Assembly (NCBI RefSeq): GCF_000002075.1
Contig: NW_004797369.1
Coordinates: forward strand, 929,623 to 982,870
DNA: 53,248 bases
Direction: 5' to 3'
Origin: Aplysia californica
Lineage: Eukaryota
The notes beneath the pieces were generated by a model. It made no database searches. It saw only the letters and a list, made by a program, of their open reading frames with translations, and was not told the DNA's origin. The position numbers were made by a program, and so were the translations under genes. Shown here piece after piece: positions 12,602 through 52,691 of the stretch; within the stretch, counting starts at the first letter, position 1, and the number at the start of each line of letters is the position of its first letter.

Positions 12602-14407
12602 TTATTTCGTCTTTCTGTGGACAAGAAATTGCCATATCCTATAGAAATCATCAAAAACTAGAATCCCAAACACTGGCAAAAACGTGCAGGCAAACACGAC
12701 AAAACCAACTGAAGTGCAGGACGGTCTGGGGTCTATAGCGGATGTTTTACTCCTAAGTTTTCTGGAGAGGTTCGCTTTAGGTACGTGGAGAGACCTCTGG
12801 ATGATGGCAATCTTCGAGGACAAGACTGTTTCATTTAGTAAGTCCTGAAAATTCTTAGAGTCAAGGAGACATGTGCACGGGCACAAATTCCCTGGACGTT
12901 TTGAAACTGGGACTTGAGACGTTTCCTCTAAAGTCTGTGTATGATTGTCGCGAGACGTCGTCACCTCTGTACTCGTCAAATGACGCTCACACGACTCAGT
13001 GTTAGCGTCAGAAGATTTGTAAGTTGGAAGTGAAACAGCCCAGCCGAGGACAGCGTTATCAGCACTAAACATGGAACCACTGAAAGAACAACGCTCACCA
13101 TTCACTTTGATTTTATTCCCAGTTGTAATTGTAGTGATGAAAAATTCTCTAGAGCAATAGCGATGAGTCTCTAGCACTTCAAGCGGTTCAGATGATGTGT
13201 ACACTTTTCCAATAGGCACACTTACATTAATTTCTATTATACATTCGCATAGCGCTGTAATCAAAATGTGGACATTTGTGTCATCAAACATAGCAATCTC
13301 TGAATGAGTGCTCCACTCAGGTATAGGATATAGCACTGCACAGGACGAATCAAAATGGCTTTTACCTGTTCCATTTAAGAGTGGCATAAAATACTGTAGA
13401 ACTAAGATAGGACCAGTGGCGTGCAGGTACGTAACTGTGTCTCCTAACTGAAATGAGAAAAATGTAGAAGTATTTTTAGAAGTGTTTTCTTTCATCTCGA
13501 TATGCTCCAGACCGGAAAGAGTTGTAGACGGAGAGACGTACGCAATTTTGATGAGAGAATCTTTATCGTCATTACGAAAAGGTGCTAAAACATAGTCTTG
13601 CCCTAAAGCAGACACAGGAGGCAATTGCTCTATCATCATATCTTTATAATTGCACGGGACAGTCCTTATAAAAACACAGTCAAAATTCGCTCCAGCGATG
13701 ACAGCTACAGGGCTCTCTGCCCTGACCCAAGTACCTGTTAGGTCAGCTCCTTCACCCAAGATTTGCAGAACATCTAAAGGCTCCAGAGACTCTCGTAAAT
13801 ACTGCCCAGAATAGAAAATTGTTGTCTTTTTGTAAGTGATAGTACTCTCAGCGGGTTCGAAGGCAAACTCGATAGTGACATCATTGAATCCTTCTGAGTT
13901 CACGACGAGAAGGAAAGAAGACAAATGTACACTTTCGGTGACCACTAAATATTCACAGGATAGCAAACTGACGGGCATGACATTGAACGCTCCAGCACTT
14001 TTGCTGGTAGATTCATGTATTTCAAGTTTCAAACTTCTTGCCTGGACGACAACCTGAGAGGTGGAGTTCACTATGATTCCCTGTTTTTTCCCTATGCCAG
14101 TTTTCTTGAAATGAACCAAATGCTCCAGATTAAGCAGCCATTGCTCGTTTGAGACGGACGTAAAGTTGTGTGAATATTTCTGAGTCTGTATTTCACCTGA
14201 TGAAGTCTTACGTGCGGGTGCTGTTACAGTGACCTCGACGTTCTGAACAAAGTCCTGTGAGAGAGGCGAGATGGCCAATGAAGCAACGGCGTGTTTGACA
14301 TGTTTTGGGAACGCTAGAACGTACTGGATTTGCGTCTCACCAAAGATGCCTGAAATAATCGCTGCAAAGCACAAACACCAATGTAATCCTCCAGATGTAG
14401 AGCCCAT
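12602..14407 (-). CDS. IgGFc-binding (FCGBP N-terminal-like) domain type I membrane protein, paralog 1 (601 aa)
   Basis: Uninterrupted ORF. The ATG at 14407 is aligned with the paralog starts (an in-frame upstream ATG at 14449 is also possible). Signal peptide MGSTSGGLHWCLCFAAIISGIFG. FCGBP-N-like motifs DLTGTWVRAESPVAVIAG and C...MIEQLPPVSALGQDY. TM VGFVVFACTFLPVFGILVF. Confidence 0.9.
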   Translation of the reverse strand: MGSTSGGLHWCLCFAAIISGIFGETQIQYVLAFPKHVKHAVASLAISPLSQDFVQNVEVTVTAPARKTSSGEIQTQKYSHNFTSVSNEQWLLNLEHLVHFKKTGIGKKQGIIVNSTSQVVVQARSLKLEIHESTSKSAGAFNVMPVSLLSCEYLVVTESVHLSSFLLVVNSEGFNDVTIEFAFEPAESTITYKKTTIFYSGQYLRESLEPLDVLQILGEGADLTGTWVRAESPVAVIAGANFDCVFIRTVPCNYKDMMIEQLPPVSALGQDYVLAPFRNDDKDSLIKIAYVSPSTTLSGLEHIEMKENTSKNTSTFFSFQLGDTVTYLHATGPILVLQYFMPLLNGTGKSHFDSSCAVLYPIPEWSTHSEIAMFDDTNVHILITALCECIIEINVSVPIGKVYTSSEPLEVLETHRYCSREFFITTITTGNKIKVNGERCSFSGSMFSADNAVLGWAVSLPTYKSSDANTESCERHLTSTEVTTSRDNHTQTLEETSQVPVSKRPGNLCPCTCLLDSKNFQDLLNETVLSSKIAIIQRSLHVPKANLSRKLRSKTSAIDPRPSCTSVGFVVFACTFLPVFGILVFDDFYRIWQFLVHRKTK

Positions 14408-17400
14408 TATAATAAAAGGATTGTGAAAAGAACTTCTTTCAAGATCCATGCTACGTCTGGTGTGGATGACGCATCCAATGTTGCAATAGACTCTGGATCT
14501 ATAACATTATTATTCTTAGCTACGGTGAGCGTACTGCCGCATACTATATGGTTCTTGTCTAGTTATTCGTAACCAAACCAAGCATTAGCGTCTGCATAAC
14601 AGGTGTCTTTTGACTTCCGACAGTTAAGTAACACAAGCGTAGGCGTAGGTCGTTGGTGGGCAATGTGGTGCGATTTTCTCCTTCTTTCATATCAAGCATC
14701 TGTCTCCATTATCTCTACAACTGCTTTTCTTTGTAAGTTACTCTCTCTAGCAACACAGTTAATTGTTTGGCTCTTATATGACCTAATTGTTGTGCAAGTG
14801 CCATTAAGCACTTACCAAAACTAAACTAAAAATAAAGAATCCCCAATTTAAGTCTTATGCCCAGGTTCCAGGCAGGAGAATGATTTGGCTCACAGTTCCT
14901 ACCGTATACATGCACAATTCTGAATGGCTATGAGCTTCTAATAGTAGACAACGGGGATCAGGTGTATCTATTTGTTATCTCATCAAGTATTGGTGAGGCT
15001 ACGAGCATACCTCAAGTCTTTTTTCAATTTTAACCACCTAGTTACAGAAGCGCGAGTCACTAAATCACAATGAGCCTTTTGACGCGGAAAACGATGATCA
15101 GCACGAGAGTTTGTTCGTTATCACACCAACTGTTAGTTTGTCTTTATAACTGGTTCCTTATTACTTCGAACTCCACAGTGCGAAAGCATTTGTCAGGTCA
15201 CGAGTTCCAGTGTAATAATAAAACACACACAATCCTAAATCACTACGAACCCATTGTCGTAGACAGTACAGATGTAGTCTATGTGTTTGTCATCATCATG
15301 TATCTTTGTGATTTCATAACTGATGAACATTTACGACGAAATCCTAGATACACAGATATTAGTCAAAAGCTCAGGCACCAGGCGGGGTTGCCGGCAGGTG
15401 GCTGATTTGTTGGTGTTTTCTACACATCGATCTGGCCCGCCTCCTCTCCACTTACGCGCACACTGCAGATGTGATTCCTTTTCAATTTAGTGCAGTGGTT
15501 TATCGCAAACCGCCAAGCAGAAACGTTTTTTTTTATTTGGGGGGGGGGGGGGGGGGGGGAGGGACTCACAGAAGAAGTGACAACGGCACAGATGAGATCT
15601 TTTTCCTGACCTATTTGACCTATTATGCTCGCCTGGTGTTTCCACTATCAGTGCAACCAATATTGGGGCAGCTATGACGTCATGCACGAAAGACGATTTT
15701 TGTTTATTAAGAAGGAAGACCCCATCTAGACCTTTACCGAAAAAGAAATAACACCGCCTGCATGCAGATGTGTTTGATATTCTGTGTAAATTTAAACCTG
15801 TTATATACATGCATATAATTCTGGTGGAGTCGACATTAGCGAAACTTTTCGTAAGAAACCACTGACTCTATAGGACTCAAAATTTAAAATGAAGGCAGCA
15901 TTCAGTACCCCTAAGAGCACAAGTTTGCCATATTTTCACAATTTAGAACTTAAGAATTTACAAAAATGTAGGTTTCGATAGTTAACATTGTTATAAAACA
16001 CTCTAGAATGAAATCAGTCCTCTATTATCCCACTGTTTAAGATATTATGAGCGTCCGGCGCTCAGTATAAGTTCAAAACTGCGTTGGTAAAAGTTTCCGG
16101 GAATCCCTAAAGCAGTTATGAGAAAAAGGAGGAGGGGATTGGGGAAGGGGGGGGGGGTCCTCCAGTGGCAGATTTGTCAGTTAGCTCAGGCTCATAGTTT
16201 CGTCAAACATGTGTTGATGAAATTGCATTTAGGTGGACAGTTACTGGGAAGAGTCCTTTTGCAAGACACGGTGACCATCGCTTTAAAACAGGGTGCTGCA
16301 CAGCGGCGACCAGCAACGGTAATTATGTGTGAATTGTCTCTTTGTAATGTTGCGTGTTATTCATGCTTATATGTATTTGTGTATTTATGTACCTAATTAT
16401 ATAACAAATTTCCCGAAATGATCAATAAAGATGAATTTATCATTTTTATCCTTTATTTTCTTATTCAGTAGATATAGTATTCCAAGGATAATAGTGACAA
16501 GGAGACTATCGTCAATTGATTAGTTGTGCCTGAAGTGGAGTTCGAAGGCAATGCATGATCGTCTAAGCTCTAGCTCTGGCTCCACGTTATCGTGCTTAAT
16601 GCACGCAGGCAGCTTGTTTCCTTTTCTGATATATTAAAATTACGAACCACGTACCTCATTTTTTTTAAAGCGGCTCTTGGGGTGCCAATGAAATGCTATA
16701 TTTTTCTATATTGTCTAGGGAAGATGGTTATACAATAACCACTGCTGTATTTACTATTGAGCTTACATTATTATGCACTACATATTATGTATATATGAGT
16801 AGATAGCTNNNNNNNNNNNNNNNNNNNNNNNNNNNNNNNNNNNNNNNNNNNNNNNNNNNNNNNNNNNNNNNNNNNNNNNNNNNNNNNNNNNNNNNNNNNN
16901 NNNNNNNNNNNNNNNNNNNNNNNNNNNNNNNNNNNNNNNNNNNNNNNNNNNNNNNNNNNNNNNNNNNNNNNNNGCAATCACCTTTTCAAACAACCACTCT
17001 CCTCCAATGCGAATATAATANNNNNNNNNNNNNNNNNNNNNNNNNNNNNNNNNNNNNNNNNNNNNNNNNNNNNNNNNNNNNNNNNNNNNNNNNNNNNNNN
17101 NNNNNNNNNNNNNNNNNNNNNNNNNNNNNNNNNNNNNNNNNNNNNNNNNNNNNNNNNNNNNNNNNNNNNNNNNNNNNTATGATTAAGANNNNNNNNNNNN
17201 NNNNNNNNNNNNNNNNNNNNNNNNNNNNNNNNNNNNNNNNNNNNNNNNNNNNNNNNNNNNNNNNNNNNNNNNNNNNNNNNNNNNNNNNNNNNNNNNNNNN
17301 NNNNNNNNNNNNNNNNNNNNNNNNNNNNNNNNNNNNNNNNNNNNNNNNNNNNNNNNNNNNNNNNNNNNNNNNNNNNNNNNNNNNNNNNNNNNNNNNNNNN

Positions 17401-22757: not shown

Positions 22758-24953
22758 CTATCTACGGAGAAGCCAACGTAAAGCCTTGTAACAATCATTT
22801 AGTATTAGAATTCCAAATATTGGTAAAATCGTGCAGCCAAACACGACAAAACCAATTGAAGTACTGGATGGCCTGTGGTCTATGGCGCACATTTTACTCC
22901 TCACTCTTCTTGAGAGGTTCGCCCTAGGAACGTGGAGAAAGCTCTGGATGGCTGCCCTCTTTGAGGACAAGAATGGCATTGTCTCATTTAGCAGATCTCG
23001 ATAATTCTGAGATCCAGAAAGACATGAACATGGGCACAAGATGAATCTGATCTTTGAAATCGGGCTCTGAGATATTTCCTCGACAGTATTTTTGTTATCA
23101 TCTTTGGCTACTGTCAATATTCTACTCCAAAACTTTATGTTATCGCGAGTAGACTCTGGTGTCACCGGAGATGTTTGCTCAACAGTTTGTCTGTTATTAT
23201 CGTGGGATGCTTCCGGTATTCTACTCAAAACCGTAATGTCTTTTTCAGTAGCCTCGGGTGTCCCCTGTGTTGTTTCCCAAATAGTTAGATCGTTATTATC
23301 GTTAGATGATTCCCCAACAGTTAGACCGCCATTATCGTTAGATGTTTCCTCAACAGTTAGACTGTTATTATCGTTAGACGTTTCCTCAAAAGCTGGACCG
23401 TTGTTATCGTTAGATGTTTCCGATATTCTACTCGAAACCGTGACGTCTTCTTCAGTAGACTTGAGTGTCGCCTGTGTTGTTCCCGCAGCTGTTGTGAGGC
23501 TCTTCATGTTGGATTTCTGTACCTCTGTACTCGTCAACTGAAGCTCACAAGATGTTGTGTTGTCATCAATGGGTTGAAAGGTTACCAATGGAACGGCCCA
23601 ACCCGTTTTGTCTCGGTGAGTAGCCACAACGACACCACTGAACAAACATTCGTCACTGTTTACAAAAATTTTATTTAATTTTGTGCTCGAGGTAATGATC
23701 ATTTGTCTTGAACAATAACGATGTTCACGTTTTGCTCTTGTCTTGAACTCTTCAACAGATACTCCAATCTTAATTTCTTTTATGCACTTGCACAAAGCAA
23801 CGATTAACGTTATTAGATTCATGTCATCAAAAGGTAATATTTCAGCATGAGTTCTCCATTTGGAGAGAGGATATATAACTGTCACTGATGAGTCAAAGAA
23901 AGTGGTGTGCTTCAAGGCCACAACATACTGTAGAACTAACACAGGTGCAGAAGCGTAGAGATAAACTATCGAGTCTCCGTTTAGTTGAAAAGTGAAAAAT
24001 GTGGGAAAATCTTGAGACGTGTTCACATTTATCAGAACATTGTCCAGACCAAAAACAGTCGTCGATGGACTGGTGTATCCGATTTTAACAAACGATTTAA
24101 TACTGGAGTTGACAAAAGGTGCAAAAACGTAGCTTTGCCCTAAAGAACACACAGGGGGCAATTGCTCGACTGCCATGTCGAGTGTACTACACAAATCCCG
24201 CTGTATCCACACGCAGCTGAAATCTGTTCCTGTGATGACAGCTACTTTTCTCTCTGCCCTGACCCATGTACCTGTAAGGTCAGTCTGTTTTCCCAAAATT
24301 TGCAAAACATCTAATGGACCTAAAGATTCAGGCAAAACCTGACCGGAATGCAAAATAATATCAGTGCTTCCGTTATTGTAAATGATTTCTCTTTGTGCTG
24401 GTTGAAGGCTCAATTCAATTATGACGTCATTGGATCCATCGGGGTTAACGACAAGTAGAAAACAAAACGAAGACGAACATTCTGTGACCACTACGTATTC
24501 ATGAGATAATAGAGTAGTGGGCATTACATTAAAGGCCCCAGCACTTTTTTTAAAGTCCTCAGCCATTCTGACTTTCAAACTTTTAGCCCGAACGACCAGC
24601 TGAGATGTCGAAGTAACCATGATACCTTGACTCTTCCCTATGCCTGACATTTCAAAATGAACCAAATACTCCAGGTTCAGAAGCCATTGCTCGTTTGAGG
24701 AGGACGAAAAGTTGTGTGAATATTCCTGAGTCCGTATTTCACCTGATGCCGTCTTACGTGCGGGTGCTGTTACAGTGACCTCGATGTTCTGAACAAAGTC
24801 CTGTGAGAGGGGTGAGATGGCCAATGAAGGAATGGCGTGTTTGACATGTTTTGGAAAGGCTAAAACGTACTGAAATTGCTGGTCCGCAAAGATGCCGGTA
24901 ATAATCATAGCAAGGCACAAACACAGAAGTAATTCTTGAAATGTTGAAGCCAT
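22758..24953 (-). CDS. IgGFc-binding domain type I membrane protein, paralog 2 (731 aa, long repetitive stalk)
   Basis: Uninterrupted ORF. The first ATG is at 24953 (the ORF-track start is a GTG). Signal peptide MASTFQELLLCLCLAMIITGIFA, motifs DLTGTWVRAERKVAVITG and VEQLPPV, mucin-like repeat stalk, TM IGFVVFGCTILPIFGILIL. Confidence 0.9.
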   Translation of the reverse strand: MASTFQELLLCLCLAMIITGIFADQQFQYVLAFPKHVKHAIPSLAISPLSQDFVQNIEVTVTAPARKTASGEIRTQEYSHNFSSSSNEQWLLNLEYLVHFEMSGIGKSQGIMVTSTSQLVVRAKSLKVRMAEDFKKSAGAFNVMPTTLLSHEYVVVTECSSSFCFLLVVNPDGSNDVIIELSLQPAQREIIYNNGSTDIILHSGQVLPESLGPLDVLQILGKQTDLTGTWVRAERKVAVITGTDFSCVWIQRDLCSTLDMAVEQLPPVCSLGQSYVFAPFVNSSIKSFVKIGYTSPSTTVFGLDNVLINVNTSQDFPTFFTFQLNGDSIVYLYASAPVLVLQYVVALKHTTFFDSSVTVIYPLSKWRTHAEILPFDDMNLITLIVALCKCIKEIKIGVSVEEFKTRAKREHRYCSRQMIITSSTKLNKIFVNSDECLFSGVVVATHRDKTGWAVPLVTFQPIDDNTTSCELQLTSTEVQKSNMKSLTTAAGTTQATLKSTEEDVTVSSRISETSNDNNGPAFEETSNDNNSLTVEETSNDNGGLTVGESSNDNNDLTIWETTQGTPEATEKDITVLSRIPEASHDNNRQTVEQTSPVTPESTRDNIKFWSRILTVAKDDNKNTVEEISQSPISKIRFILCPCSCLSGSQNYRDLLNETMPFLSSKRAAIQSFLHVPRANLSRRVRSKMCAIDHRPSSTSIGFVVFGCTILPIFGILILNDCYKALRWLLRR
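23281..23423 (-). repeat. Coding 36-bp (12-aa) tandem repeat x4 in the stalk of paralog 2
   Basis: SETSNDNNGPAF / EETSNDNNSLTV / EETSNDNGGLTV / GESSNDNNDLTI. Confidence 0.9.
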
Positions 24954-26834
24954 GATAAAACAAGAGGGACGAAGAGGCCGCCAGAGCGTCGGTGTCACTA
25001 AAACCTCGACACACTCTATCTTATATTATATTTAGGTCTCACACAATGAGCTGCCCAATGTCAGTTGGCTGAACACAGGGAAGGCACAGAATACAGCCTG
25101 TTTATATAGTCTTGCCGGAAACTTTAGTTTTGAGAACCTGTCTGCCTGTGTTAGTGCGTTGAAGAACTACGTCAATTAGCGCTCACTTTTATTTCCTGTT
25201 TGCGAATATCTTCATCTGCTCAATATCTGTCTTTTGATATTAGAGATTCCTGCTTTTCGATTGTTCGGTTTGTCTATTTGTAGGACCAAAGTTCTACTTG
25301 ATGCATAAAAGCTCTTTGGCTTGAAAAGAAACTCTTGACCAACCGAAAGTGTAAGTTTTCGAAGCTGAAACAATCAAAAACTGTATAGGAAGACAAAAGA
25401 GAAATAACCAAACTGGGGTCTGGAATTTCAGCGTATTGGTCAAGTTCGTAGAAATATATCACATCAGTAATTGTAAACACCAGGTTTAGCCTTCGACTAT
25501 TGTGCAAATTAGATAGCCAAAAGAGTTGTAACCAGAAGCCCCTTAGCCAAGATAAGTACAGCACTACGACAAAATTATTGGCAAATGGTTTTGTCTGTGA
25601 GTTGTGGAAAAGGAAAATAAAAGAAGCCTACGCCATCAACACAATTAAACATCTGTCATCCGAACTACACATTGTGAACTTCACTGACTCACTGTCAGTC
25701 TTGTATGAGAAAGAAAATGACCATAATCTAAACCATGATTTGACACATACTGTTTGAATCCCACCACTTGGTAACATTCTGTGGTGTCAACCTGGTTATG
25801 TAGTGGATTCCCGAACACTGAAACACGTCTGGAAATGACAGAGCAGACACACTTGCCAAAAGGACATCTAGACAAGAACATCCCAACATTCCAACTTCAC
25901 ACAACACTGCAAAACAAATAATTAAAAGCAACAACAAACAATATTAGATGAGCAGATGTGCCTTGAGAAAGACAGGCAGAGTACAAACATGGGACTACAA
26001 TAAAAGGAAATGACACTACCAACCACCTACAGAGCAAGAAATAGGCCATTATCTTCCGACTACGAACCGAGCATTTCAACTTCCACTTGAACATTATTAA
26101 ACCAGCGCCCCCCCCTCCACACACACATGTTTGACCATGGATATGATACAGAGAATCCTCACCTGTTCCACTACACATCTTTAAATTATGACATCAACTT
26201 CACTTCTCCCTCCGAGATCGAACATTGAAAACCAAGGATATTACATTTCTGTAACCTCCTGTTGACAACACAGTCTAGTAAATCTGCACGTGTCACTACA
26301 TGGCATTTGACAGACTGACAAAAGCCCAGCTGTTGTAGGATTCGTAACAACAACAACAACAAAAACAACAAAAACAACAAAAAACAACAAAAAACAACAA
26401 AAACAACAACAAAACAATAACAGTTTAATCGGGTTTCTCTTATTTCCTTTGTCTACAAACCTTTGATAAAACCGCTGGCTATACTGCTTTCTTTATCTAC
26501 ATTACAACACTGATTTGCAAACTCTATCTTTCATTCTTACAGAGCCTAGTCGAAAAAAAGGATTCATCTAGTCTAAGTTGGACCCCTGCTGCCAAAAAGA
26601 CCAAGCCAAGACCTTTGAGCATAACAGCAATAATANNNNNNNNNNNNNNNNNNNNNNNNNNNNNNNNNNNNNNNNNNNNNNNNNNNNNNNNNNNNNNNNN
26701 NNNNNNNNNNNNNNNNNNNNNNNNNNNNNNNNNNNNNNNNNNNNNNNNNNNNNNNNNNNNNNNNNNNNNNNNNNNNNNNNNNNNNNNNNNNNNNNNNNNN
26801 NNNNNNNNNNNNNNNNNNNNNNNNNNNNNNNNNN

Positions 26835-30438: not shown

Positions 30439-32382
30439 TTACATATCGAATATCATAGTTTTTTGTTTCTTTCGTAACCCACGGTAAAGCCAATGCAAAA
30501 CATTCCAGCAGTCACTAAATATCAGACAGCCAAATATTGGCAAAAACGTGCAGGCAAACACGAGGAAACCAACTGAAGTACTCGATGGTCTGTGGTCTAT
30601 GGCGCACATTTTGCTCCTTATTGTTCTAGAGAGGTTTGCTCTAGGAACGTATAGATAGCTGCTGATGGCTGCAATCCCTGAGGATAAGAATGTCTCATTT
30701 AGCAGGTCTCGATAGCCCTGAGGCAGAAGAACACATTTACATGGACACAAGTTAGCTCTCATTTGTGGGACTGTTCTGGTATGTATTTCTTTAGTGAAAG
30801 TCTTGGTTGTGTTGACTTTAGATGCCGTTGTCTCTGTTTCTGAAGTCAGAGTTTCCCAAAATGCTTTGGCATCAGTGAAGTTGAGAGTCGCAGGAGACGT
30901 GTCTTCCAGTTGGTGTATGTTATTAAAGACAGGCGTCACAACCTCCGTGCTTGTCATCTCAGGCTCACGCGACATCGTGTCATCATTAGCTGATTTAAAA
31001 CTAGCAAGTGGAGCTGCCCAACCACTAAATGATCTTCCAAGTGCAATGATCAAACCGCTGAATGAGCACCGGTCGCTGTTTACTTGGATAGTTTCCTCCG
31101 TTGTGTGTGAAGTAATAAACATTTCTCTCGAGCAAAACCGGCATGTAGTTCCTTCATCTACGTGTTCCGGCGGTGTGTACAGTTCTTGAAACTCAACTCC
31201 AACGTCTATTTCTGTTATGCAATAACACAACGCTGTAATTACCATTTGAAACTTGATGTCGTCAAAGGGTAATATTTCTGCACGAGTGCCCCATTTGGAA
31301 AAAGGATAAAGAACAACGGCCGACGAATCAAAAGTCAAGCCAATATCATATTCAGGTAGGACAAGGACATACTGTAGCACCAATACGGGTGCCGAAGCTC
31401 TTAGATAGACCACATTGTCCCCAGACACTTTTACAGAGAAAAATGAGGAAGTATTTTGAGACGTGTTCACATTCATATCAATATGTTCCAAACCTAAAAA
31501 AGTTGTTGAAGGAGAGGTGTATGCGATTTTGATGAAGGTATCCTTGCTACCGTAGTAAAAAGGGGCAAGAACATATTCGTGTCCTAACTCAGACACAGGC
31601 GGAAGCTGCTCGATCATCATATCTTTAGTCCTGCACGAAAGCCTCCTTAAATGTACACAGTCAAAATTGGTCCCAGCGATGACAGCTACGGGATACCATG
31701 CTGTGACCCATGTACCTGTGAGGTCAGTCCTTTCGCCCAAGATTTGCAAAACATCTAATGGCTCCAAATATTCTCGTAAAGATTGCCCAGAATAGTAAAT
31801 ATCATCTATCTCTTTGTATGCGATACTACTATTTTCTGGATGTAATTTCAAGTTAATAGTGACGAAATTATCGCTTTCTGCATTCACAACAAGAAGGATA
31901 CAGTCCGCTGTTACACATTCCGTGACCACTAAATATTCATGGGATAACAAGCTAATGGGCAAAACATTGAAACTTCCAGCGCTAGTAAAACCCGCAGTTT
32001 CCCTACTTCTAGCCTGGACAGCAAGCCGAGAAGTGGAAGATACTAAGATTGCCTGCTTCTTCCCTTTGCCAGACTCCGTGAAATGAACCAAATACTCGAG
32101 GTTAAGAAACCATTGCTCGTTTGAGTTGGACGTAAAACTGTGTGTATACTCTTGAGTCAATGTTTCACCTGATGAGGTCGTATTTACGGGTGCTTTTACA
32201 GTGACCTCGATGCTCTCCTCAACTAAGTCCTGTGAGACCACCGAGATGGCCAAAGAAGGAACAGCGTTTGTGGTGTGTTTTGGAAAAGCTAGAATATACT
32301 GGAAATGTTCTTTTGCAAAGACATCTGCTATAATCACAGCAAAGCACAAATATCGCTGTAGTCCTTGAAATGTTGAACCCAT
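30439..32382 (-). CDS. IgGFc-binding domain type I membrane protein, paralog 3 (647 aa)
   Basis: Uninterrupted ORF from ATG. Signal peptide MGSTFQGLQRYLCFAVIIADVFA, motifs DLTGTWVTAWYPVAVIAG and MIEQLPPVSELGHEY, Thr-rich stalk, TM VGFLVFACTFLPIFGCLIF. Confidence 0.92.
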   Translation of the reverse strand: MGSTFQGLQRYLCFAVIIADVFAKEHFQYILAFPKHTTNAVPSLAISVVSQDLVEESIEVTVKAPVNTTSSGETLTQEYTHSFTSNSNEQWFLNLEYLVHFTESGKGKKQAILVSSTSRLAVQARSRETAGFTSAGSFNVLPISLLSHEYLVVTECVTADCILLVVNAESDNFVTINLKLHPENSSIAYKEIDDIYYSGQSLREYLEPLDVLQILGERTDLTGTWVTAWYPVAVIAGTNFDCVHLRRLSCRTKDMMIEQLPPVSELGHEYVLAPFYYGSKDTFIKIAYTSPSTTFLGLEHIDMNVNTSQNTSSFFSVKVSGDNVVYLRASAPVLVLQYVLVLPEYDIGLTFDSSAVVLYPFSKWGTRAEILPFDDIKFQMVITALCYCITEIDVGVEFQELYTPPEHVDEGTTCRFCSREMFITSHTTEETIQVNSDRCSFSGLIIALGRSFSGWAAPLASFKSANDDTMSREPEMTSTEVVTPVFNNIHQLEDTSPATLNFTDAKAFWETLTSETETTASKVNTTKTFTKEIHTRTVPQMRANLCPCKCVLLPQGYRDLLNETFLSSGIAAISSYLYVPRANLSRTIRSKMCAIDHRPSSTSVGFLVFACTFLPIFGCLIFSDCWNVLHWLYRGLRKKQKTMIFDM

Positions 32383-37880: not shown

Positions 37881-39593
37881 CTAATGGTAAAGCCAGCATA
37901 AAGCTTTGTACAAATCGCATAGCACCAGGCTCCCAAATATCGGGAAAAAAGTACAAACAAACACGAGGAAACCAACTGCAGTACTTGACGGCCTGTCATC
38001 CGTGGCGGACGTTTTGCTCCTTACTGTTTTGGAGAGGTCCTCTTTTAGAACATAGAGATAACTCTGGATGGCTGCTATCTCTGAGGACAAGGCTGTCCTA
38101 TTGAGCATGTCTCGATGAGTATAAAAAGCTCGTGGACATGAACAGGGGCACAAGTTAACTCTGACTAGTGGGGTTGGGCTCGGGCTTACTTCATCAACTC
38201 TGTAGTGGAAATTCACAAGTGGCACGGCCCAACCAGAAACTGATCTTTTGACATTAATGATAGAACCAGTAAACGGACAACTTTCACCGTTTACTTCGAT
38301 TTTATTCTCTAAATCGTTTGAAGAAATGAGTATTTCTTTAGAGCAATAACGAGAGGTTCCCCCCTCATCTTCGGGTTCCGAAAGTGTGTTCAGTTCTGTA
38401 ATATCTACTCCAATTTGTATTTCATGTATACAGAGGCAGGATGCAATGATTATCATTTCATAATTGTTGTCGTCAAAAGTTAAAATTTCTGCACGATTGA
38501 CCCATTTGGATATAGGGTATAGAACAGTAGCTGACAAATCAAAAAGAATTGTTTCGTTGAACGGTGGCAAAACAAACTGTACAATCAACACAGGGTCAGA
38601 GGCATGAAGATGAGTAATAGTGTGGGCTTCTACTTGAAAATAGAGAAAAGTGGATGTATTTCGAGATGTGCTTTCTTTCATCTGAATATGTTCCAGGCCA
38701 GAAAAAGTTGTGGAGGGAGTTACGTAAACAATTTTGACGAAAGAAACCTTATTTTCGTTAGAAAAAGGCGTTAGAACATAATCTTGTCCCAAATCAGAAA
38801 CAGGGGGTAACTGCTCAATAAGCATATCTCTAAATTTGCACTTCTCATTCCCCATAAACACACAGTCAAAACTGGCCCCAGCAATGACAGCTACAGGTCT
38901 TTGTGCCCTGACCCAAGTACCTGTGAGGTCAGCTCCTTCACCCAAGATTTGCAGAACATCTAATGACTCCAAAGATTCTCGTAAAGATTGCCCCGAATAG
39001 AAAGTAATTGTATTTTTGTAATTGATACTACTGTCTGCGGGTTCGAAGGCAAACTCGATAGTGACATCATTGAATCCTTCTGAGTTCACGACGAGAAGGA
39101 AAGAAGACAAATGTACACTTTCGGTGACCACTAAATATTCACAGGATAGCAAACTGACGGGCATGACATTGAACGCTCCTGCAGATTTACCAGAACTTTC
39201 AGTTATCAGTATTTTAAAAGTTTTTGCATGAACCACAAGACCAGATGTGGACGTTATTAGAATTCCCTGGTTCTTCCCGATACCAGGCTTCTGGAAATGA
39301 ACCAAGTACTCCAGATTGAGCAGCCATTGTTCGTTTGAGGCGGATGTAAAGTTGTGTGAATATTCCTGAGTCTTTATTTCACCAGATAAAGACGTACGTG
39401 CGGGTGCTGTTACAGTGACCTCGACGTTCTGAACAATATCCTGTGAGAGAGGTGAAATGGCCAATGAAGGAACGGCGTAGTTGAGATGTTTTGGAAACGC
39501 TAACACGTACTTGACCAGCTCTTCAGCAAATATATCTGTAATGATCACAGAAAGGCACAAACACCGATGCCACTCTTGAATTTTTATGTTCAT
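37881..39593 (-). CDS. IgGFc-binding domain type I membrane protein, paralog 4 (570 aa, minimal stalk)
   Basis: Uninterrupted ORF. The first ATG is at 39593 (the ORF-track start is a GTG). Signal peptide MNIKIQEWHRCLCLSVIITDIFA, motifs DLTGTWVRAQRPVAVIAG and LIEQLPPV, TM VGFLVFVCTFFPIFGSLVL. Confidence 0.9.
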   Translation of the reverse strand: MNIKIQEWHRCLCLSVIITDIFAEELVKYVLAFPKHLNYAVPSLAISPLSQDIVQNVEVTVTAPARTSLSGEIKTQEYSHNFTSASNEQWLLNLEYLVHFQKPGIGKNQGILITSTSGLVVHAKTFKILITESSGKSAGAFNVMPVSLLSCEYLVVTESVHLSSFLLVVNSEGFNDVTIEFAFEPADSSINYKNTITFYSGQSLRESLESLDVLQILGEGADLTGTWVRAQRPVAVIAGASFDCVFMGNEKCKFRDMLIEQLPPVSDLGQDYVLTPFSNENKVSFVKIVYVTPSTTFSGLEHIQMKESTSRNTSTFLYFQVEAHTITHLHASDPVLIVQFVLPPFNETILFDLSATVLYPISKWVNRAEILTFDDNNYEMIIIASCLCIHEIQIGVDITELNTLSEPEDEGGTSRYCSKEILISSNDLENKIEVNGESCPFTGSIINVKRSVSGWAVPLVNFHYRVDEVSPSPTPLVRVNLCPCSCPRAFYTHRDMLNRTALSSEIAAIQSYLYVLKEDLSKTVRSKTSATDDRPSSTAVGFLVFVCTFFPIFGSLVLCDLYKALCWLYH

Positions 39594-40883
39594 GGTAAGG
39601 CAGTGACGGTGAGGAAACCTTGAAAGCAGCCTCCTCCTAATGGTCCTTCGTATAAACACCTAAAGAATTCAAAACCAATAGTTCGTATTATGATCTTTTT
39701 CGTTTGTCATAGTTACAATTTTGTTACTTTGGTTGGCAGGTCTCCCGTATTATCCTTGTACTGTGAAATTATTGCCCACAAGACCGTCTAGGTTACATAA
39801 AATTAAAGTATGTACATATCTTTTGTGTTTTTGTTGTGTATATATGAATAGTTCTCACAATGAAAATAATCTTCCCTGAAAGTGTAAAGAGAATCCGTTT
39901 CAAATTCCCATATCATAAGTTATATGGTACTGCTTTGTCTCTAGACGAAAAGAACACAGTAAGAAAAATATGACTGTGTACTGAACGCCCACAACATGTC
40001 CGATGCTACGATAAGACATCTTGAATAATAGTATAATAGTCGTCTCCTGATATCACACGAATCATCAAGAAAGAAACAGTCCATTATATATTGTGGACTA
40101 TACCACATTCGCTGATGTACAGGACCTTGGTGTAGTGCCAATTACAACTTTACTGGCAATCTATATTGAAAGTGTTTTGTGTTGATCGCTCTCCGACTGT
40201 GTTATCAAACATAGTTTTGAGCTTGAAACCATAGCATAAGCCGACTCTTTAATGTGTTGTCGTTTTGAACAAAACAAATCATAATTAATGAAAGGGAATG
40301 CAAGTCAAAGATGCACTGAGTTGTATCTAAAACCACCAGAAACCACAAGAAAAGCATAATACAATCCAGGGAAACTGGAAATTATTACCCGTAAGGAATG
40401 CCTCCGCTGTATATATATAGTTCTTACCTGAAACGTACCTTTTAGAATGTGTTCTTGTCAGCGGAAGTTTGATCACTCAACTCGTTTCCTCCGGTAGAAT
40501 GGCGTCAACCGTAGTTTGTCAAGAGCTCTGTGTTCTTTGTCGTGAGACCTCTGAGGAGAGGGGAAGGAAGGGGGTCTTTGTATTTGGGTCCCACTGAACA
40601 CATAAGACTTAGAGGTCTTCCGGGAAGTAGAGAGGTCGGTTTGTCGGCAATATGCGCTGGTACCACGAAAACTGAGGTTGGACGGAGGAAAAAGTAACGA
40701 TTTGATTAGCCATTGCCGGAAGGTTTGCCATTTACGTAAGCAGTAGCTGAAATAGGCCTATATTATGTTGGTTACATTAGCAGCAGCACAAAAAACGCAT
40801 TAATACGCTAGGGGACCGATTGAGTTCTTCAAGTTAGGCGACTCTTGATGGGAAACGACAATAGAATCAACATATTTCACCAG

Positions 40884-49950: not shown

Positions 49951-51780
49951 TTAATTGCTTTCCACAGTGGTTCTCTGAAGTATCCAACGGTAAAGGAGAC
50001 GCAAAACCCTAAAACAATCGCTTAACACCAAACTCCCAAATATTGGCAAAAACATACAGCCAAACACGACAAAACCAACTGAAGTGCTGGACTGCCTGTT
50101 GTCTATGGCAGACATTTTGCTCCTCACTCTTTTAGAGAGGTTCGCTGCAGGAACGTAGAGATAACTCTGGATGGCTGCAGTCTCTGTGGACAAGACTGTC
50201 TCATTTAGCAGATCTAGAAAACTCTGAAATCCAAGAAGACATTTACATGGGCATATCTTTTTTCGAACTTTTGAGACCGAGATTTGAGAAGTTTCTTCAA
50301 AAATGTTCGTGTAGTTGACGTGAGATGTCGTCATCTCTGTAGTGGTCATCTGAGGCTCACAGAACGTAGTATTATCGTAGGCCGATCTGAAAGGAACGAG
50401 TGGGATGGCCCAGCCACTAAGTGCTTTCTGAAATGCAATGATCAAACCACTGAATATACATCCTTCACTTTTTACTTGGATGGAATTTACCTGTTTGTTT
50501 GACGTAATAAACATTTCTCGTGAGCAAAACTGGCACTCGCCCCCTGTGTCTGCAGATGTTGTAGGTGTGTTCAGTTCTTGAATGGCAACTCCGACTTTTA
50601 CTTCATGTATACACTTGCACAGTGCGGTAATTATCATTTGGAATTTTATGTCATTAAAAGTTAAAATTTCGGCATAAGTGCCCCATTTTGAGATAGGAAA
50701 TAGAACTGTTGCTGACGTATCAAACATGTGGTTTTCGTCGTGCAGAAGTGGAATAACATACTGTACAACCAATACTGGGGAAGAAGCGCGCAGATGGATG
50801 ACCGTTTCCCCGTCGATTTTCAAAGAGAAAAATGTAGACGTAGTTTGAGATGTGTTTGCGCTTATTTCTATATTTTCCAAACCAAAAAAAGTCGTTAAAG
50901 GAGTAATAAACCCAATTTTGACGAAAGAATCTTTACTACCGTTGGCAAAAGGTGCTAAAACATATTCTTGTCCTAAAACAGACACAGGGGGCAACTGCTC
51001 GACAGTCATGTCTCTGTCAACGCACAAGGGCCCTCTCAGCCATACACAATCGAAATTAGCCCCTGCAATGACCACTACGTTCCTTTGTGCCTGGATCCGT
51101 GTACCTGTGAGATCAGTTCTACTACCCAAAATTTGCAGAACATCTAATGGGCCTACAGGTTCTCGTACCATTTGTCCTGAATACAATGTATTATTTTTGT
51201 CTTTATACATAACAGTATTGTTTGCTGGGTGCAGTTTTAGTTCAATAGCGACTTCATTTTCTCCCTCAGGATTCACAACGAGAAGAAAGCAAAATGAAAC
51301 GATACATTCTGTTACCACTAAATATTCATTAGATAGCAATCGAACGGACAAGACATTAAACGCTCCAATACTTTTAATTGTAAGATTTTTCCTTCTGATT
51401 TTTGAACTTCTTGCTTGGACAACCAGCTGAGCTGTGGAATTTACGACAATTCCTTGTTTCCTCCCTACACCTGAAAGGTCGAATTGAGCCAAATTCTCCA
51501 GGTACAGCAGCCATTGGTCGTTTGAATTGGACGTAAAGTTGTGTGTATATTTCTGAGTCTGTATTTCACCTGATGAAGTCTTCCGAGCGGGTGCTGTTAC
51601 AGTGACTTCGATGTTCTGCTCAAAGTCTTGTGAGAAAGGCGAGATGGCCAATGAAGGAATGGCGGTGTGGAGATGTTTTGGAAACGCTAGAACGTACTCG
51701 AACTGTTTGTCAGCTAAGATGTCTACAATAATCACAGCAAAGCACAAACATAGAAGTAATCCTTGAAGTGTTGAAGCCAT
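49951..51780 (-). CDS. IgGFc-binding domain type I membrane protein, paralog 5 (609 aa)
   Basis: Uninterrupted ORF. The first ATG is at 51780 (the ORF-track start is a TTG). Signal peptide MASTLQGLLLCLCFAVIIVDILA, motifs DLTGTRIQAQRNVVVIAG and VEQLPPVSVLGQEY, TM VGFVVFGCMFLPIFGSLVL. Confidence 0.9.
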   Translation of the reverse strand: MASTLQGLLLCLCFAVIIVDILADKQFEYVLAFPKHLHTAIPSLAISPFSQDFEQNIEVTVTAPARKTSSGEIQTQKYTHNFTSNSNDQWLLYLENLAQFDLSGVGRKQGIVVNSTAQLVVQARSSKIRRKNLTIKSIGAFNVLSVRLLSNEYLVVTECIVSFCFLLVVNPEGENEVAIELKLHPANNTVMYKDKNNTLYSGQMVREPVGPLDVLQILGSRTDLTGTRIQAQRNVVVIAGANFDCVWLRGPLCVDRDMTVEQLPPVSVLGQEYVLAPFANGSKDSFVKIGFITPLTTFFGLENIEISANTSQTTSTFFSLKIDGETVIHLRASSPVLVVQYVIPLLHDENHMFDTSATVLFPISKWGTYAEILTFNDIKFQMIITALCKCIHEVKVGVAIQELNTPTTSADTGGECQFCSREMFITSNKQVNSIQVKSEGCIFSGLIIAFQKALSGWAIPLVPFRSAYDNTTFCEPQMTTTEMTTSHVNYTNIFEETSQISVSKVRKKICPCKCLLGFQSFLDLLNETVLSTETAAIQSYLYVPAANLSKRVRSKMSAIDNRQSSTSVGFVVFGCMFLPIFGSLVLSDCFRVLRLLYRWILQRTTVESN

Positions 51781-52691
51781 GATTAAACAAAAAGGGTGAA
51801 GAAACGTCAAAGTCTCTCCTCAGGCACTCTTTAATGGTTTGACACTCAAAGAGTTCTGGACCACTTTGAGCTACTCAGTCAACTGGATAGTATCACGATT
51901 CGTTCTTCAGGGCAACAATTTAAAATGTAGGCGTGTTGCCAAGACTCTAATTTCACATTGGCATGTTTGTTGTGGGGAAACTAGATGTATTTAGTAAAAC
52001 GATGTTAATTCCAAATTTTGTTCATTGTGTGGGATAAGCCAAAAAAACAACAACAACCAAACCAAAATATTTACAATAGCAAGGATAAGACCCCTTGAAA
52101 GTGAGAGCAGAAACGTAAACCTCCACCATAAGGAGAATAATCTGTTTTCGAGGAAAGGTTGTACAGACTTTCATTTGGAATCGGACAAGCATCCTTAGTC
52201 ATTGCGGCTCTTCGAGAAATTATTTAGTGTATATTGACTGTCCATTCACTTTATGTTGCGTTCAATTCGCGTGCACTCTTCTTTTGGATAAAATATTACA
52301 CTCACCACACACTCTTCAACTTGTTATGCTTGGTATCAATTGAATAAAATGTTAAGAGATAGAGAATGCAGTTCGGTCAAATATATAGTGGTCTGTAAAA
52401 CTCTGTACCCCATTGAGCAGAATATAGTGATACAGGAGATACAAGGATCATTGTCGCGTTATACATTTTGGCATAAATCTTTGATTAACAGCGAGTGTTC
52501 ATTAGAAGTTTTACCCATTTTGAAAAACCGCTCTGTGTCTTTTGTAAACCGATTACCTCGACGGAAGTATTCACTCGATAGCTTTTCAAGAAGTCCCTGT
52601 CCATTGATTCTAGGGGTTTATTCTCTTCCTTTGTATCTGTTTCTTTTCAGGCTTTAAAGTACATATTGGCACGTGAGATGTCTTCTTTAAT

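What the first reader, a model, noticed from the sequence alone, without database searches (positions are those of the whole stretch)
13652..13678. Hypervariable C-x7-C loop, plus two other CDR-like loops, in an otherwise conserved framework
Seen: between the conserved V(A/V)VIxG and EQLPPV motifs each paralog has two invariant Cys exactly 7 residues apart with nearly unrelated content: CVFIRTVPC (13652-13678), CVWIQRDLC (24189-24215), CVHLRRLSC (31633-31659), CVFMGNEKC (38838-38864), CVWLRGPLC (51022-51048). Two further sharply bounded variable segments occur. Before AGAFNV: LKLEIHESTSKS / LKVRMAEDFKKS / RETAGFTS / FKILITESSGKS / SKIRRKNLTIKS. Between LQY and FDSS: FMPLLNGTGKSH / VVALKHTTF / VLVLPEYDIGLT / VLPPFNETIL / VIPLLHDENHM. 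Inference: a disulfide-pinned loop and neighbouring loops may form a variable ligand-binding surface.
Basis: partly seen in the sequence, partly recalled or inferred. Interest (0 to 1): 0.75.

Follow-up and report, generated by a model that had tools for sequence, protein, structure and literature searches.

The report
Variable loops in sea-hare surface proteins
Three sharply bounded variable loops in a tandem family of sea-hare membrane proteins are real, but they are the same connecting loop in three internal repeats and change at about the neutral rate, so they look like unconstrained connectors rather than proven binding loops.

Summary
All five coordinates encode C-x7-C on the minus strand. 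The three segments are among the five most variable stretches of the ectodomain.

The genes are single-exon paralogs from Aplysia californica. There are 5 in the window and at least 14 full-length copies in the genome, 13 of them in a ~140-kb tandem array. Each encodes a signal peptide, a PF17517 (IgGFc_binding) ectodomain, a Ser/Thr-rich stalk, a conserved juxtamembrane module and a TM helix.

New here: the ectodomain contains three homologous beta-sandwich repeats. The three "CDR-like" loops are the same loop in each, lying after the repeat's last long strand.

Diversifying selection is not supported:
- M7/M8 and M1a/M2a are significant, but the signal disappears once the fast class gets its own synonymous rate (omega 1.24, p=0.35).
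- Loop omega is 0.98 (CI 0.68-1.34), against 0.38-0.42 elsewhere.

The disulfide is supported only indirectly: 13 of 14 copies have both Cys and one lost both.

I could not test whether the loops share one face, because no model coordinates are served. Verdict: a real, tidy pattern, most likely relaxed constraint.

The parts
12602..14449 (-). Paralog 1 CDS (615 aa), single exon: signal peptide, PF17517 ectodomain, stalk, juxtamembrane module, TM helix
   Evidence: ORF. PF17517 E=6.9e-27, 94.9 bits against a cut-off of 25.6. AF2 model mean pLDDT 82.5, pTM 0.76, helices 21-35 and 576-614.
13979..14332 (-). Repeat D1 (residues 40-157), a beta-sandwich lying outside the Pfam match
   Evidence: VIA: 1nc7_A Z 9.5, rmsd 3.6, 104 aligned, model 40..162. 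hhalign D1-D2 probability 82%, E 1.1e-5; D1-D3 68%, E 4.6e-5.
13997..14032 (-). Variable loop 1 (residues 140-151, LKLEIHESTSKS), after the last long strand of D1
   Evidence: Entropy maximum 2.66 bits. DSSP coil 142-150, pLDDT block 71. Indels of 2-4 residues. An allele in run X12 carries H145N, S147F and S149R.
13610..13978 (-). Repeat D2 (residues 158-280)
   Evidence: VIA on the domain model: 1nc7_A Z 8.2, rmsd 3.2, 100 aligned, model 30..150 = protein 160-280. hhalign D2-D3 probability 95%, E 2.3e-8.
13652..13678 (-). The finding: C-x7-C loop (residues 258-266, CVFIRTVPC), after the long strand 241-257 of D2
   Evidence: Translation. Cys pair in 13 of 14 paralogs. Entropy 2.30 at 265. Omega 1.45 over 7 codons, not different from 1.
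13316..13609 (-). Repeat D3 (residues 281-378)
   Evidence: hhalign. VIA pilin/Ig-like sandwiches, Z 4-5, model 151..248.
13355..13390 (-). Variable loop 3 (residues 354-365, FMPLLNGTGKSH), after the long strand 340-356 of D3
   Evidence: Entropy maximum 2.60. DSSP coil 357-368. Indels. Omega 1.03 over 9 codons.
13010..13315 (-). D4 (residues 379-480), a different sandwich holding two further variable segments (about 419-430 and 460-468)
   Evidence: hhalign against D1-D3 gives probability of 2% or less. Entropy. Omega 0.63 and 1.04.
12635..12889 (-). Conserved CPCxC / LNET / basic motif / TM module (residues 521-605)
   Evidence: Invariant columns. Matches by itself in other proteins (profile positions 464-598). 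TM helix 576-614.
22758..24998 (-). Paralog 2 CDS (746 aa); C-x7-C at 24189-24215
30439..32382 (-). Paralog 3 CDS (647 aa); C-x7-C at 31633-31659
37881..39659 (-). Paralog 4 CDS (592 aa); C-x7-C at 38838-38864
49951..51810 (-). Paralog 5 CDS (619 aa); C-x7-C at 51022-51048

Best explanation
The window holds 5 of at least 14 intact copies of an Aplysia californica gene family that grew by tandem duplication.

Each copy encodes a type I membrane glycoprotein. Its ectodomain is the compact PF17517 (IgGFc_binding) unit, also found in echinoderm, other mollusc and bacterial type-IX-secreted proteins.

That unit contains three homologous beta-sandwich repeats (D1, D2, D3) plus a fourth, different sandwich. 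Each repeat ends with a long strand of the form S-x-x-P-V-x-V. Then comes an exposed loop, and then a conserved connector (AFNVMPVSLLSCEY after D1, IEQLPPVSALGQDY after D2) that leads into the next repeat.

In D2 the loop is closed by a probable disulfide. This is a shortened, lineage-specific form of an older C-x9-C loop that abuts the DH..EQLPP motif.

The loops diverge by point substitutions and small indels along the gene tree at about the neutral rate, while the framework is under purifying selection. So the variability mainly reflects lack of structural or functional constraint on exposed connectors.

Shown: the anatomy, the repeat homology, the rates and the Cys co-variation. Inferred: the disulfide, solvent exposure, and that the loops carry no specific function.
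For: Family and organism.

Architecture: Pfam; AF2 pLDDT 82.5 and 90.1. The whole span 40-480 aligns at TM 0.80-0.84 to mollusc and bacterial PF17517 models.

Repeats: hhalign E 1.1e-5, 2.3e-8 and 4.6e-5, with D4 as a negative control at 2% probability or less. The same PDB chain, 1nc7, is the top hit for D1 (Z 9.5) and D2 (Z 8.2).

Rates:
- Loops omega 0.98 (CI 0.68-1.34), against 0.38 in strands and 0.42 in other non-strand residues.
- The dual-rate model gives omega 1.24 for the fast class, p=0.35.
- Five sister pairs give pN/pS 0.72 against 0.41; Fisher p=0.0012 against the framework, and not above the neutral share.
- Per-site test: beta>alpha at p<0.1 in 1 of 24 loop codons, and no site of 420 survives correction.
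- Young clade omega 1.24, CI 0.66-2.42.

Loop sequences follow the gene tree: the same loop types occur in sister paralogs.

The same half-conserved, half-variable pattern is seen in the 13 of these homologues (of 75 examined) that have the C-x9-C form, among them sea urchin and sea star proteins.
Against: - Standard site models favour a class with omega of about 1.9-2.6. The LRTs are 37.9, 65.3 and 42.5, and the high-posterior sites include all three loops.
- Loop omega is 2.3 times that of other predicted loops, so these are not just 'any loops'.
- One other individual or copy (run X12) carries three non-synonymous and no synonymous changes within 5 codons of loop 1. This patch is found in none of the 30 fetched loci.
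- A 143-nt tract identical between paralogs 1 and 4 stops 4 nt from loop 1. That would fit loops being kept distinct while the framework is homogenised.
- The upper confidence limits (1.34 and 2.42) leave room for moderate positive selection.
- My codon models used one fixed topology, fixed branch-length proportions and gap-free columns only (24 of 31 loop codons).
Confidence: 0.6

Rival explanations
1. One reading: the three loops are specificity-determining loops of a diversified recognition family, with one of them disulfide-pinned. They are driven apart by diversifying selection and together form a ligand-binding surface.
For: - M1a/M2a, M7/M8 and M8a/M8 LRTs of 37.9, 65.3 and 42.5, with posterior above 0.8 at 147-149, 263-265, 267-268 and 362-365.
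- Loop omega 2.3 times that of other non-strand residues.
- Three clustered non-synonymous allele differences in loop 1.
- The gene-conversion tract ends at loop 1.
- Tandem expansion with pseudogene fragments, which is typical of recognition families.
- Weak fold resemblance of D1/D2 to carbohydrate-binding modules, Z about 5-7.
Against: - Omega is not above 1 by any test that lets the synonymous rate vary or that counts directly.
- Two further equally variable segments lie in D4.
- The distal half of the equivalent loop is also variable across distant homologues.
- There are no expression, ligand or 3-D proximity data. One polyA RNA run gave 0 reads.
Confidence: 0.25
2. The contrast is produced largely by concerted evolution. 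Gene conversion keeps homogenising the framework between paralogs, while conversion tracts stop at the mismatched, indel-bearing loops. The loops therefore simply look older. This would give higher synonymous as well as non-synonymous divergence, without any selection on them.
For: - A 143-nt identical run between paralogs 1 and 4 at 72.8% overall identity; the maximum in 2000 permutations was 43. It abuts loop 1.
- Synonymous substitutions per codon are 0.60 in loops against 0.40-0.51 elsewhere.
- The fast class has 2.1 times the synonymous rate.
Against: - Only one tract was documented.
- In sister pairs the loop pS (0.10-0.63) tracks the framework pS (0.13-0.48) rather than being uniformly old.
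- Framework omega of 0.35-0.50 shows real purifying selection, which by itself explains most of the contrast.
Confidence: 0.1
3. Artefact or decay: the loops differ because the alignment there is not homologous, or because many copies are non-functional and drifting.
For: - Indels in loops 1 and 3.
- Site 363 saturates in the per-site fit.
- The raised synonymous rate in the fast class could be misalignment.
- No RNA evidence.
Against: - 14 intact ORFs of 570-850 aa.
- Every domain has omega of 0.35-0.50, significantly below 1 (p from 1e-12 to 1e-27).
- Loop 2 has no indels in 14 of 14 copies and is still variable.
Confidence: 0.05

Closest known systems
N-terminal (N1 / 'H') domain of human FCGBP, the type member of Pfam PF17517 IgGFc_binding
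   Same: All five window proteins match PF17517 at 80-101 bits against a cut-off of 25.6.
   Different: - There are no VWD assemblies. Only 1 of 5 has a sub-threshold VWD hit, 17.6 bits against a cut-off of 22.9.
- The Aplysia proteins are membrane-anchored through a stalk and TM helix and are single-exon.
[quoted passage not shown]
- No solved structure was found by sequence.
Mollusc and echinoderm 'IgGFc-binding protein-like' or uncharacterised proteins (Batillaria, Elysia, Lottia, Haliotis, Pecten, Nucella, Lytechinus, Strongylocentrotus, Acanthaster)
   Same: - Same ectodomain. In several molluscs the same full architecture, including the C-terminal module, is matched across profile positions 14-599.
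- Echinoderm members have a Cys-bracketed loop at the same place.
   Different: - Only 21-32% identical.
- Their loop is mostly C-x9-C directly followed by D/N-H. In Aplysia it is C-x7-C plus three residues, then D-M.
- None is characterised in the literature searched.
Bacterial type-IX-secretion cargo proteins with PF17517 plus PKD and Por_Secre_tail/CHU_C domains (Bacteroidota, Ignavibacteriota)
   Same: The predicted structure of the whole span 40-480 aligns at TM 0.80-0.83 by query.
   Different: Different domain partners and a different kingdom, and function unknown. The comparison is between predicted models only.
Thermotoga maritima TM1070 (PDB 1nc7), a small beta-sandwich
   Same: Best structural match of both D1 (Z 9.5, 104 aligned) and D2 (Z 8.2, 100 aligned).
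   Different: 12% identity, a single domain, and function unknown to me. At Z 8-9.5 this is at the edge of what the tool's own note calls a common arrangement.
Hypervariable loops of recognition receptors (Ig/TCR CDRs, lamprey VLR inserts, Biomphalaria FREPs); comparison recalled, not from a call
   Same: Discrete variable loops in a conserved beta framework, in a tandemly expanded family.
   Different: - No omega above 1.
- No evidence of somatic or combinatorial diversification.
- Loops lie in three successive repeats rather than at one end of one domain.
- Binding is not shown.

Membership tests
Pfam PF17517 IgGFc_binding domain family | Match to the family HMM above the curated gathering score | tested here: met
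   5 of 5 window proteins: 80.0-100.8 bits against a cut-off of 25.6, E 2.4e-22 to 1.1e-28.
Pfam PF17517 IgGFc_binding domain family | Conserved D-[HM]-x-x-E-Q-L-P-P core motif after the second repeat (a motif seen in the alignments here, not a curated definition) | tested here: met
   DMxxEQLPP is invariant in 13 of 13 paralogs. [DN][HM]xx[ED]x[LIVM]xP occurs in 34 of 75 distant homologues.
FCGBP-type mucus proteins | PF17517 domain followed by repeated VWD-C8-TIL assemblies | tested here: not met
   No VWD, C8 or TIL match above threshold in 5 of 5. One sub-threshold VWD hit of 17.6 bits against 22.9.
FCGBP-type mucus proteins | Binding of IgG Fc | not testable with these tools
   Molluscs have no IgG (established knowledge). 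For FCGBP itself, binding was reported as not reproducible (PMC11796319, passages).
Hypervariable (CDR-like) recognition loops under diversifying selection | Variability concentrated in a few sharply bounded loops of a conserved framework | tested here: met
   Entropy windows above 2.2 bits occur at only five places, against an ectodomain mean of 1.06. Flanks are invariant.
Hypervariable (CDR-like) recognition loops under diversifying selection | Non-synonymous rate exceeds synonymous rate in the loops | tested here: not met
   - Omega 0.98, CI 0.68-1.34.
- Dual-rate LRT p=0.35.
- pN/pS 0.72 in 5 sister pairs.
- 1 of 24 loop codons at p<0.1 in the per-site test.
- Young clade omega 1.24, CI 0.66-2.42.
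- M8 and M2a alone are significant.
Hypervariable (CDR-like) recognition loops under diversifying selection | The loops come together on one exposed face | not testable with these tools
   Structure prediction returns pLDDT and DSSP only, and no coordinates appear in /data. Only their equivalence in three repeats could be shown.
Hypervariable (CDR-like) recognition loops under diversifying selection | Loop sequence determines ligand specificity | not testable with these tools
   Needs binding assays.
Disulfide-closed loop | Both Cys are conserved and are gained or lost together | tested here: met
   13 of 14 full-length copies have both; L009 has neither, with F and Y instead. 18 of 75 distant homologues have a Cys pair bracketing the equivalent loop.
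Disulfide-closed loop | Sulfur atoms within bonding distance in a structure | not testable with these tools
   No coordinates. pLDDT of the 261-270 block is 71-75.

The most novel reading that the evidence does not exclude
The PF17517 ectodomain is a three-repeat scaffold. Its one exposed inter-repeat loop, present three times, sets binding specificity. On this reading Aplysia has expanded it into an array of at least 14 surface or shed recognition proteins. Their loops are kept distinct between paralogs, escaping gene conversion, and are polymorphic between individuals. It would be a mollusc counterpart of variable innate receptors, built on a fold whose function is unknown from bacteria to humans.
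Probability: 0.15. Interest if true: 0.7.

Novelty: new member of a known kind. Interest (0 to 1): 0.32.

Why it matters
PF17517 is a widespread domain. The profile found 2295 representatives at E of 0.001 or better, in bacteria, molluscs, echinoderms and human FCGBP. I found no solved structure by sequence and no accepted function.

Two results here are useful beyond this window:
- The unit is built from three homologous beta-sandwich repeats.
- The family's conserved DH/DM..EQLPP motif sits right after a Cys-bracketed loop that is half conserved and half free.

For the scan, the lesson is a caution. A very CDR-like picture, together with significant M8 and M2a tests, turned out to be compatible with plain neutral drift of exposed connectors once the synonymous rate was allowed to vary. 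If the minority reading were right, the family would be a new class of diversified mollusc receptors, and the three loops would be the obvious places to mutate.

Tried and rejected
- **Positive selection from site models.** M2a, M8 and M8a-vs-M8 were all significant. I rejected this as proof because a null with a fast class at omega=1 and 2.09 times the synonymous rate fits as well (lnL -11205.00 against -11204.56) and better than M2a (-11209.46).
- **Whole-model Foldseek search of PDB.** It gave only strings of Ig-like domains at TM of 0.12 or less, which is uninformative.
- **PDB by sequence.** No hit at E of 1 or better.
- **Expression.**
  - The runs that hold the gene cover coding and flanking DNA evenly and behave as DNA.
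  - The one raw polyA RNA run laid (X15) gave 0 reads. The tool says this is no test unless the organism is shown in that run, and its tissue is coded.
- **Allele patch in loop 1 (run X12).** I tested whether it was copied from another paralog. It was not found in any of the 30 fetched loci or in the window. An unassembled copy is not excluded.
- **Loop shuffling between paralogs.** Rejected by eye, because loop types follow the gene tree.
- **Beta-helix idea for PF17517 (recalled).** Rejected, because the models are successive sandwiches.
- **Literature.** There were four searches: PF17517/IgGFc_binding; IgGFc-binding protein + mollusc + hemocytes + expansion; Aplysia + IgGFc-binding; and the phrase 'IgGFc-binding protein N-terminal domain'.
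  - Judged from the listings only, none describes this family.
  - Supplements were not opened and could hold expression tables that name these LOC genes.
- **The search of earlier findings by words.** It returned nothing.
Full report
**What is there.** The window carries five long open reading frames on the minus strand, of 615, 746, 647, 592 and 619 aa. They are 55-61% identical to the first. All five match Pfam PF17517 IgGFc_binding far above threshold: 80-101 bits against a cut-off of 25.6, E 2e-22 to 1e-28.

The window is G000:C99:929623-982870 of a 927-Mb, 4332-contig assembly. Proteins on the same 1,682,345-bp contig are named Aplysia californica by NCBI.

A six-frame search of the genome gave 30 matches. 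Of these, 14 are full-length open frames: 13 in one same-strand array over about 140 kb of contig C99 and one on C323. The rest are fragments, some with stops. One full-length copy, L010, has a run of N in its C-terminal part. I left that as it is.

**Architecture.** Each protein has, in order:
- a signal helix;
- an ectodomain of about 440 aa;
- a disordered Ser/Thr/Asn-rich stalk of very different length between copies;
- a conserved CPCxC...LNET...basic motif...DxRPS module;
- a TM helix.

**Check of the observation.**
- All five coordinate ranges translate to the quoted C-x7-C peptides, and the other two segments of paralog 1 are at 13997-14032 and 13355-13390.
- Over 13 paralogs the ectodomain has a mean column entropy of 1.06 bits.
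- Windows above 2.2 bits occur only around residues 145-147, 265, 357-363, 423 and 463-465.
- The flanks are invariant.
- Both Cys are present in 13 of 14 full-length copies. L009 has lost both, with F and Y in their place.
- The first three loop positions are conservative (V, x, L/I/M). The variable part is the last four residues and the two to three after the second Cys.

**Structure.**
- An AF2 model of paralog 1 with 88 aligned sequences has mean pLDDT 82.5 and pTM 0.76. A model of residues 131-395 has pLDDT 90.1 and pTM 0.89.
- The three segments are coils that each follow a long strand: 133-141, 241-257 and 340-356. Their pLDDT is lowered, to 71, 71 and 80 per 10-residue block.
- A Foldseek search of the whole model was uninformative, with TM of 0.12 or less.
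- The exhaustive aligner put the same small sandwich, 1nc7, on top for residues 40-162 (Z 9.5, rmsd 3.6, 104 aligned) and for residues 160-280 (Z 8.2, rmsd 3.2, 100 aligned). Residues 281-378 resemble pilin or Ig-like sandwiches at Z 4-5.
- Profile-profile comparison of sub-alignments cut from the 88-sequence alignment supports homology of three repeats. D1-D2 gives probability 82%, E 1.1e-5. D2-D3 gives 95%, E 2.3e-8. D1-D3 gives 68%, E 4.6e-5. Each against D4 gives 2% or less.
- The aligned cores all end at the S-x-x-P-V-x-V strand just before the variable segment. After loops 1 and 2 come two similar connectors, AFNVMPVSLLSCEY and IEQLPPVSALGQDY.

The three 'CDR-like' loops are therefore one and the same loop in three tandem repeats. 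That explains why there are three in D1-D3 and why they are so sharply bounded. The Atlas's own model of this protein aligns over residues 40-480 at TM 0.80-0.84 with PF17517 proteins of molluscs and of Bacteroidota or Ignavibacteriota type-IX-secretion cargo. So the four subdomains form one old, compact unit.

I could not test whether the three loops meet on one face, because no coordinates are returned.

**The Cys loop is old.** A profile search found 2295 representatives at E of 0.001 or better. The full architecture recurs in Batillaria, Elysia, Lottia, Haliotis and Pecten, all uncharacterised.
- Of the 75 distant homologues I aligned (chosen as hits of 900 aa or less among the best 150), 18 have a Cys-bracketed loop directly before [DN]H..E. 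In 13 of these the loop is C-x9-C. They include sea urchin and sea star 'IgGFc-binding protein-like' proteins.
- In those 13, positions 1-4 are conserved (A, N, V, P; entropy 0-2.0 bits) and positions 5-9 are free (2.6-3.2 bits).

This is the same half-and-half pattern as in Aplysia. Freedom of the distal half of the loop is thus a property of the fold, not of this cluster.

**Selection.** I wrote a codon-model likelihood. It reproduces IQ-TREE's M0 likelihood: -11537.9627 against -11537.9625, with omega 0.44. The data were 13 paralogs and 420 gap-free codons, with fixed topology and fixed branch-length proportions.
- **Classical site models favour selection.** M1a/M2a gives 2dlnL 37.9, M7/M8 gives 65.3 and M8a/M8 gives 42.5. 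A class of 7-12% of sites has omega 1.9-2.6. Posteriors above 0.8 fall at 147-149, 263-265, 267-268 and 362-365, among others.
- **The signal does not survive controls.**
Strands have 0.38 and other non-strand residues 0.42.
  - If the fast class may have its own synonymous rate, the null (omega 1, synonymous rate x2.09, 9.6% of sites) fits as well as the alternative (omega 1.24): 2dlnL 0.89, p=0.35.
  - A per-site two-rate test finds beta>alpha at p<0.1 in 10 of 420 codons, one of them in the loops (265, p=0.029). None survives correction. Purifying selection at p<0.1 holds for 2 of 24 loop codons against 154 of 396 others.
  - Direct counts in five independent sister pairs give pN/pS 0.72 in loops and 0.41 in the framework. 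That is higher than the framework (Fisher p=0.0012) but not above the neutral share (binomial p=0.097, on the low side).
  - In the youngest clade of five copies, loop omega is 1.24 (CI 0.66-2.42) against 0.45.
  - The two extra variable segments in D4 give 0.63 and 1.04.

Moderate or episodic positive selection is not excluded.

- Loop omega is more than twice that of other loops.
- Contigs of another sample (X12) differ from the reference at 10 CDS positions, 7 non-synonymous and 3 synonymous.
  - Three of these, H145N, S147F and S149R, lie within five codons of loop 1, with no synonymous change in any loop and none in the C-x7-C.
  - By my arithmetic, 3 or more of 10 changes falling in a given 12 of 615 codons has a chance of about 8e-4. 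This is post hoc, and one mutational event could explain it.
  - The patch occurs in none of the 30 fetched loci.
- A 143-nt run identical between paralogs 1 and 4 ends four bases from loop 1. Overall identity is 72.8%, and the longest run in 2000 permutations was 43. Framework homogenisation that spares the loops could also explain the raised synonymous divergence there.

**Function.** Nothing here shows a ligand.
- Expression could not be shown.
- The human type domain has no accepted function (PMC11796319, passages read).
- Four literature searches, judged from their listings, returned no description of this mollusc family. Supplements were not opened.
- Fold resemblances of D1 and D2 to carbohydrate-binding modules are weak, at Z 5-7.

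**Verdict.** This is a real and neatly explained pattern in an uncharacterised, lineage-expanded PF17517 membrane family. The loops are the equivalent exposed connector of three internal repeats and evolve at about the neutral rate. The CDR analogy is attractive but not supported by the rate tests, and it is untested in 3-D.

Noticed in passing
window 13851-13993 (paralog 1) and the matching part of paralog 4 (37881-39659): A 143-nt tract is identical between two paralogs that are 72.8% identical overall. The longest run in 2000 permutations was 43. It is a gene-conversion footprint, and it ends 4 nt from variable loop 1.
   Followed up: yes
window 13916-13933 (residues 173-178 of paralog 1): A second Cys pair, C-x4-C in TECVxSxC, is present in 11 of 13 paralogs. 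In paralogs 1 and 4 both Cys are replaced by Ser. The site lies inside the 143-nt converted tract, so the double loss may have spread by conversion.
   Followed up: partly
L009:1492-3285 (-), G000:C99 about 1,081,663-1,083,465: This is the one intact paralog that lost both Cys of the C-x7-C loop (F...Y). It also sits on a long branch (0.63) of the gene tree.
   Followed up: partly
window 12746-12769 (residues 561-568, LSRKLRSK) and the equivalent place in all paralogs: A conserved basic [RK]-x-x-R-like motif lies about 10-15 residues before the TM helix in 13 of 13 paralogs. It looks like a furin-type shedding site, which is an inference and untested. The C-terminal module alone also matches other proteins (profile positions 464-598).
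   Followed up: partly
window 22758-24998 (paralog 2) and L013:707-3256: The stalk between ectodomain and membrane module varies from near zero to about 250 aa. It is built of Ser/Thr/Asn/Glu-rich tandem repeats: an ETSNDNN type in paralog 2 and an ESVENTSQGT type in L013.
   Followed up: no
window 13997-14017 in run X12: Three non-synonymous differences, 7 nt apart from each other, lie in loop 1 of another individual or copy (H145N, S147F, S149R). The patch is absent from all 30 fetched loci.
   Followed up: partly
G000:C99 about 1,033,000-1,034,000, 1,047,000-1,048,000 and 1,065,000-1,066,500; G000:C1094: Fragments of the family with in-frame stops lie between intact copies, suggesting birth-and-death evolution. 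The C1094 copy carries the same loop 2 as L013 on C323 and may be a haplotig.
   Followed up: no
window 13010-13315 (D4, residues 379-480): D4 holds two more variable segments (about 419-430 and 460-468) with omega 0.63 and 1.04. Paralog 4 has a sub-threshold VWD hit there (17.6 bits against a cut-off of 22.9).
   Followed up: partly
window, 13 runs of N (for example 1470-2072 and 29228-30131): These are assembly gaps or masked stretches between the genes. They were left untouched, and the low GC in the 28-30 kb bin reflects them.
   Followed up: no
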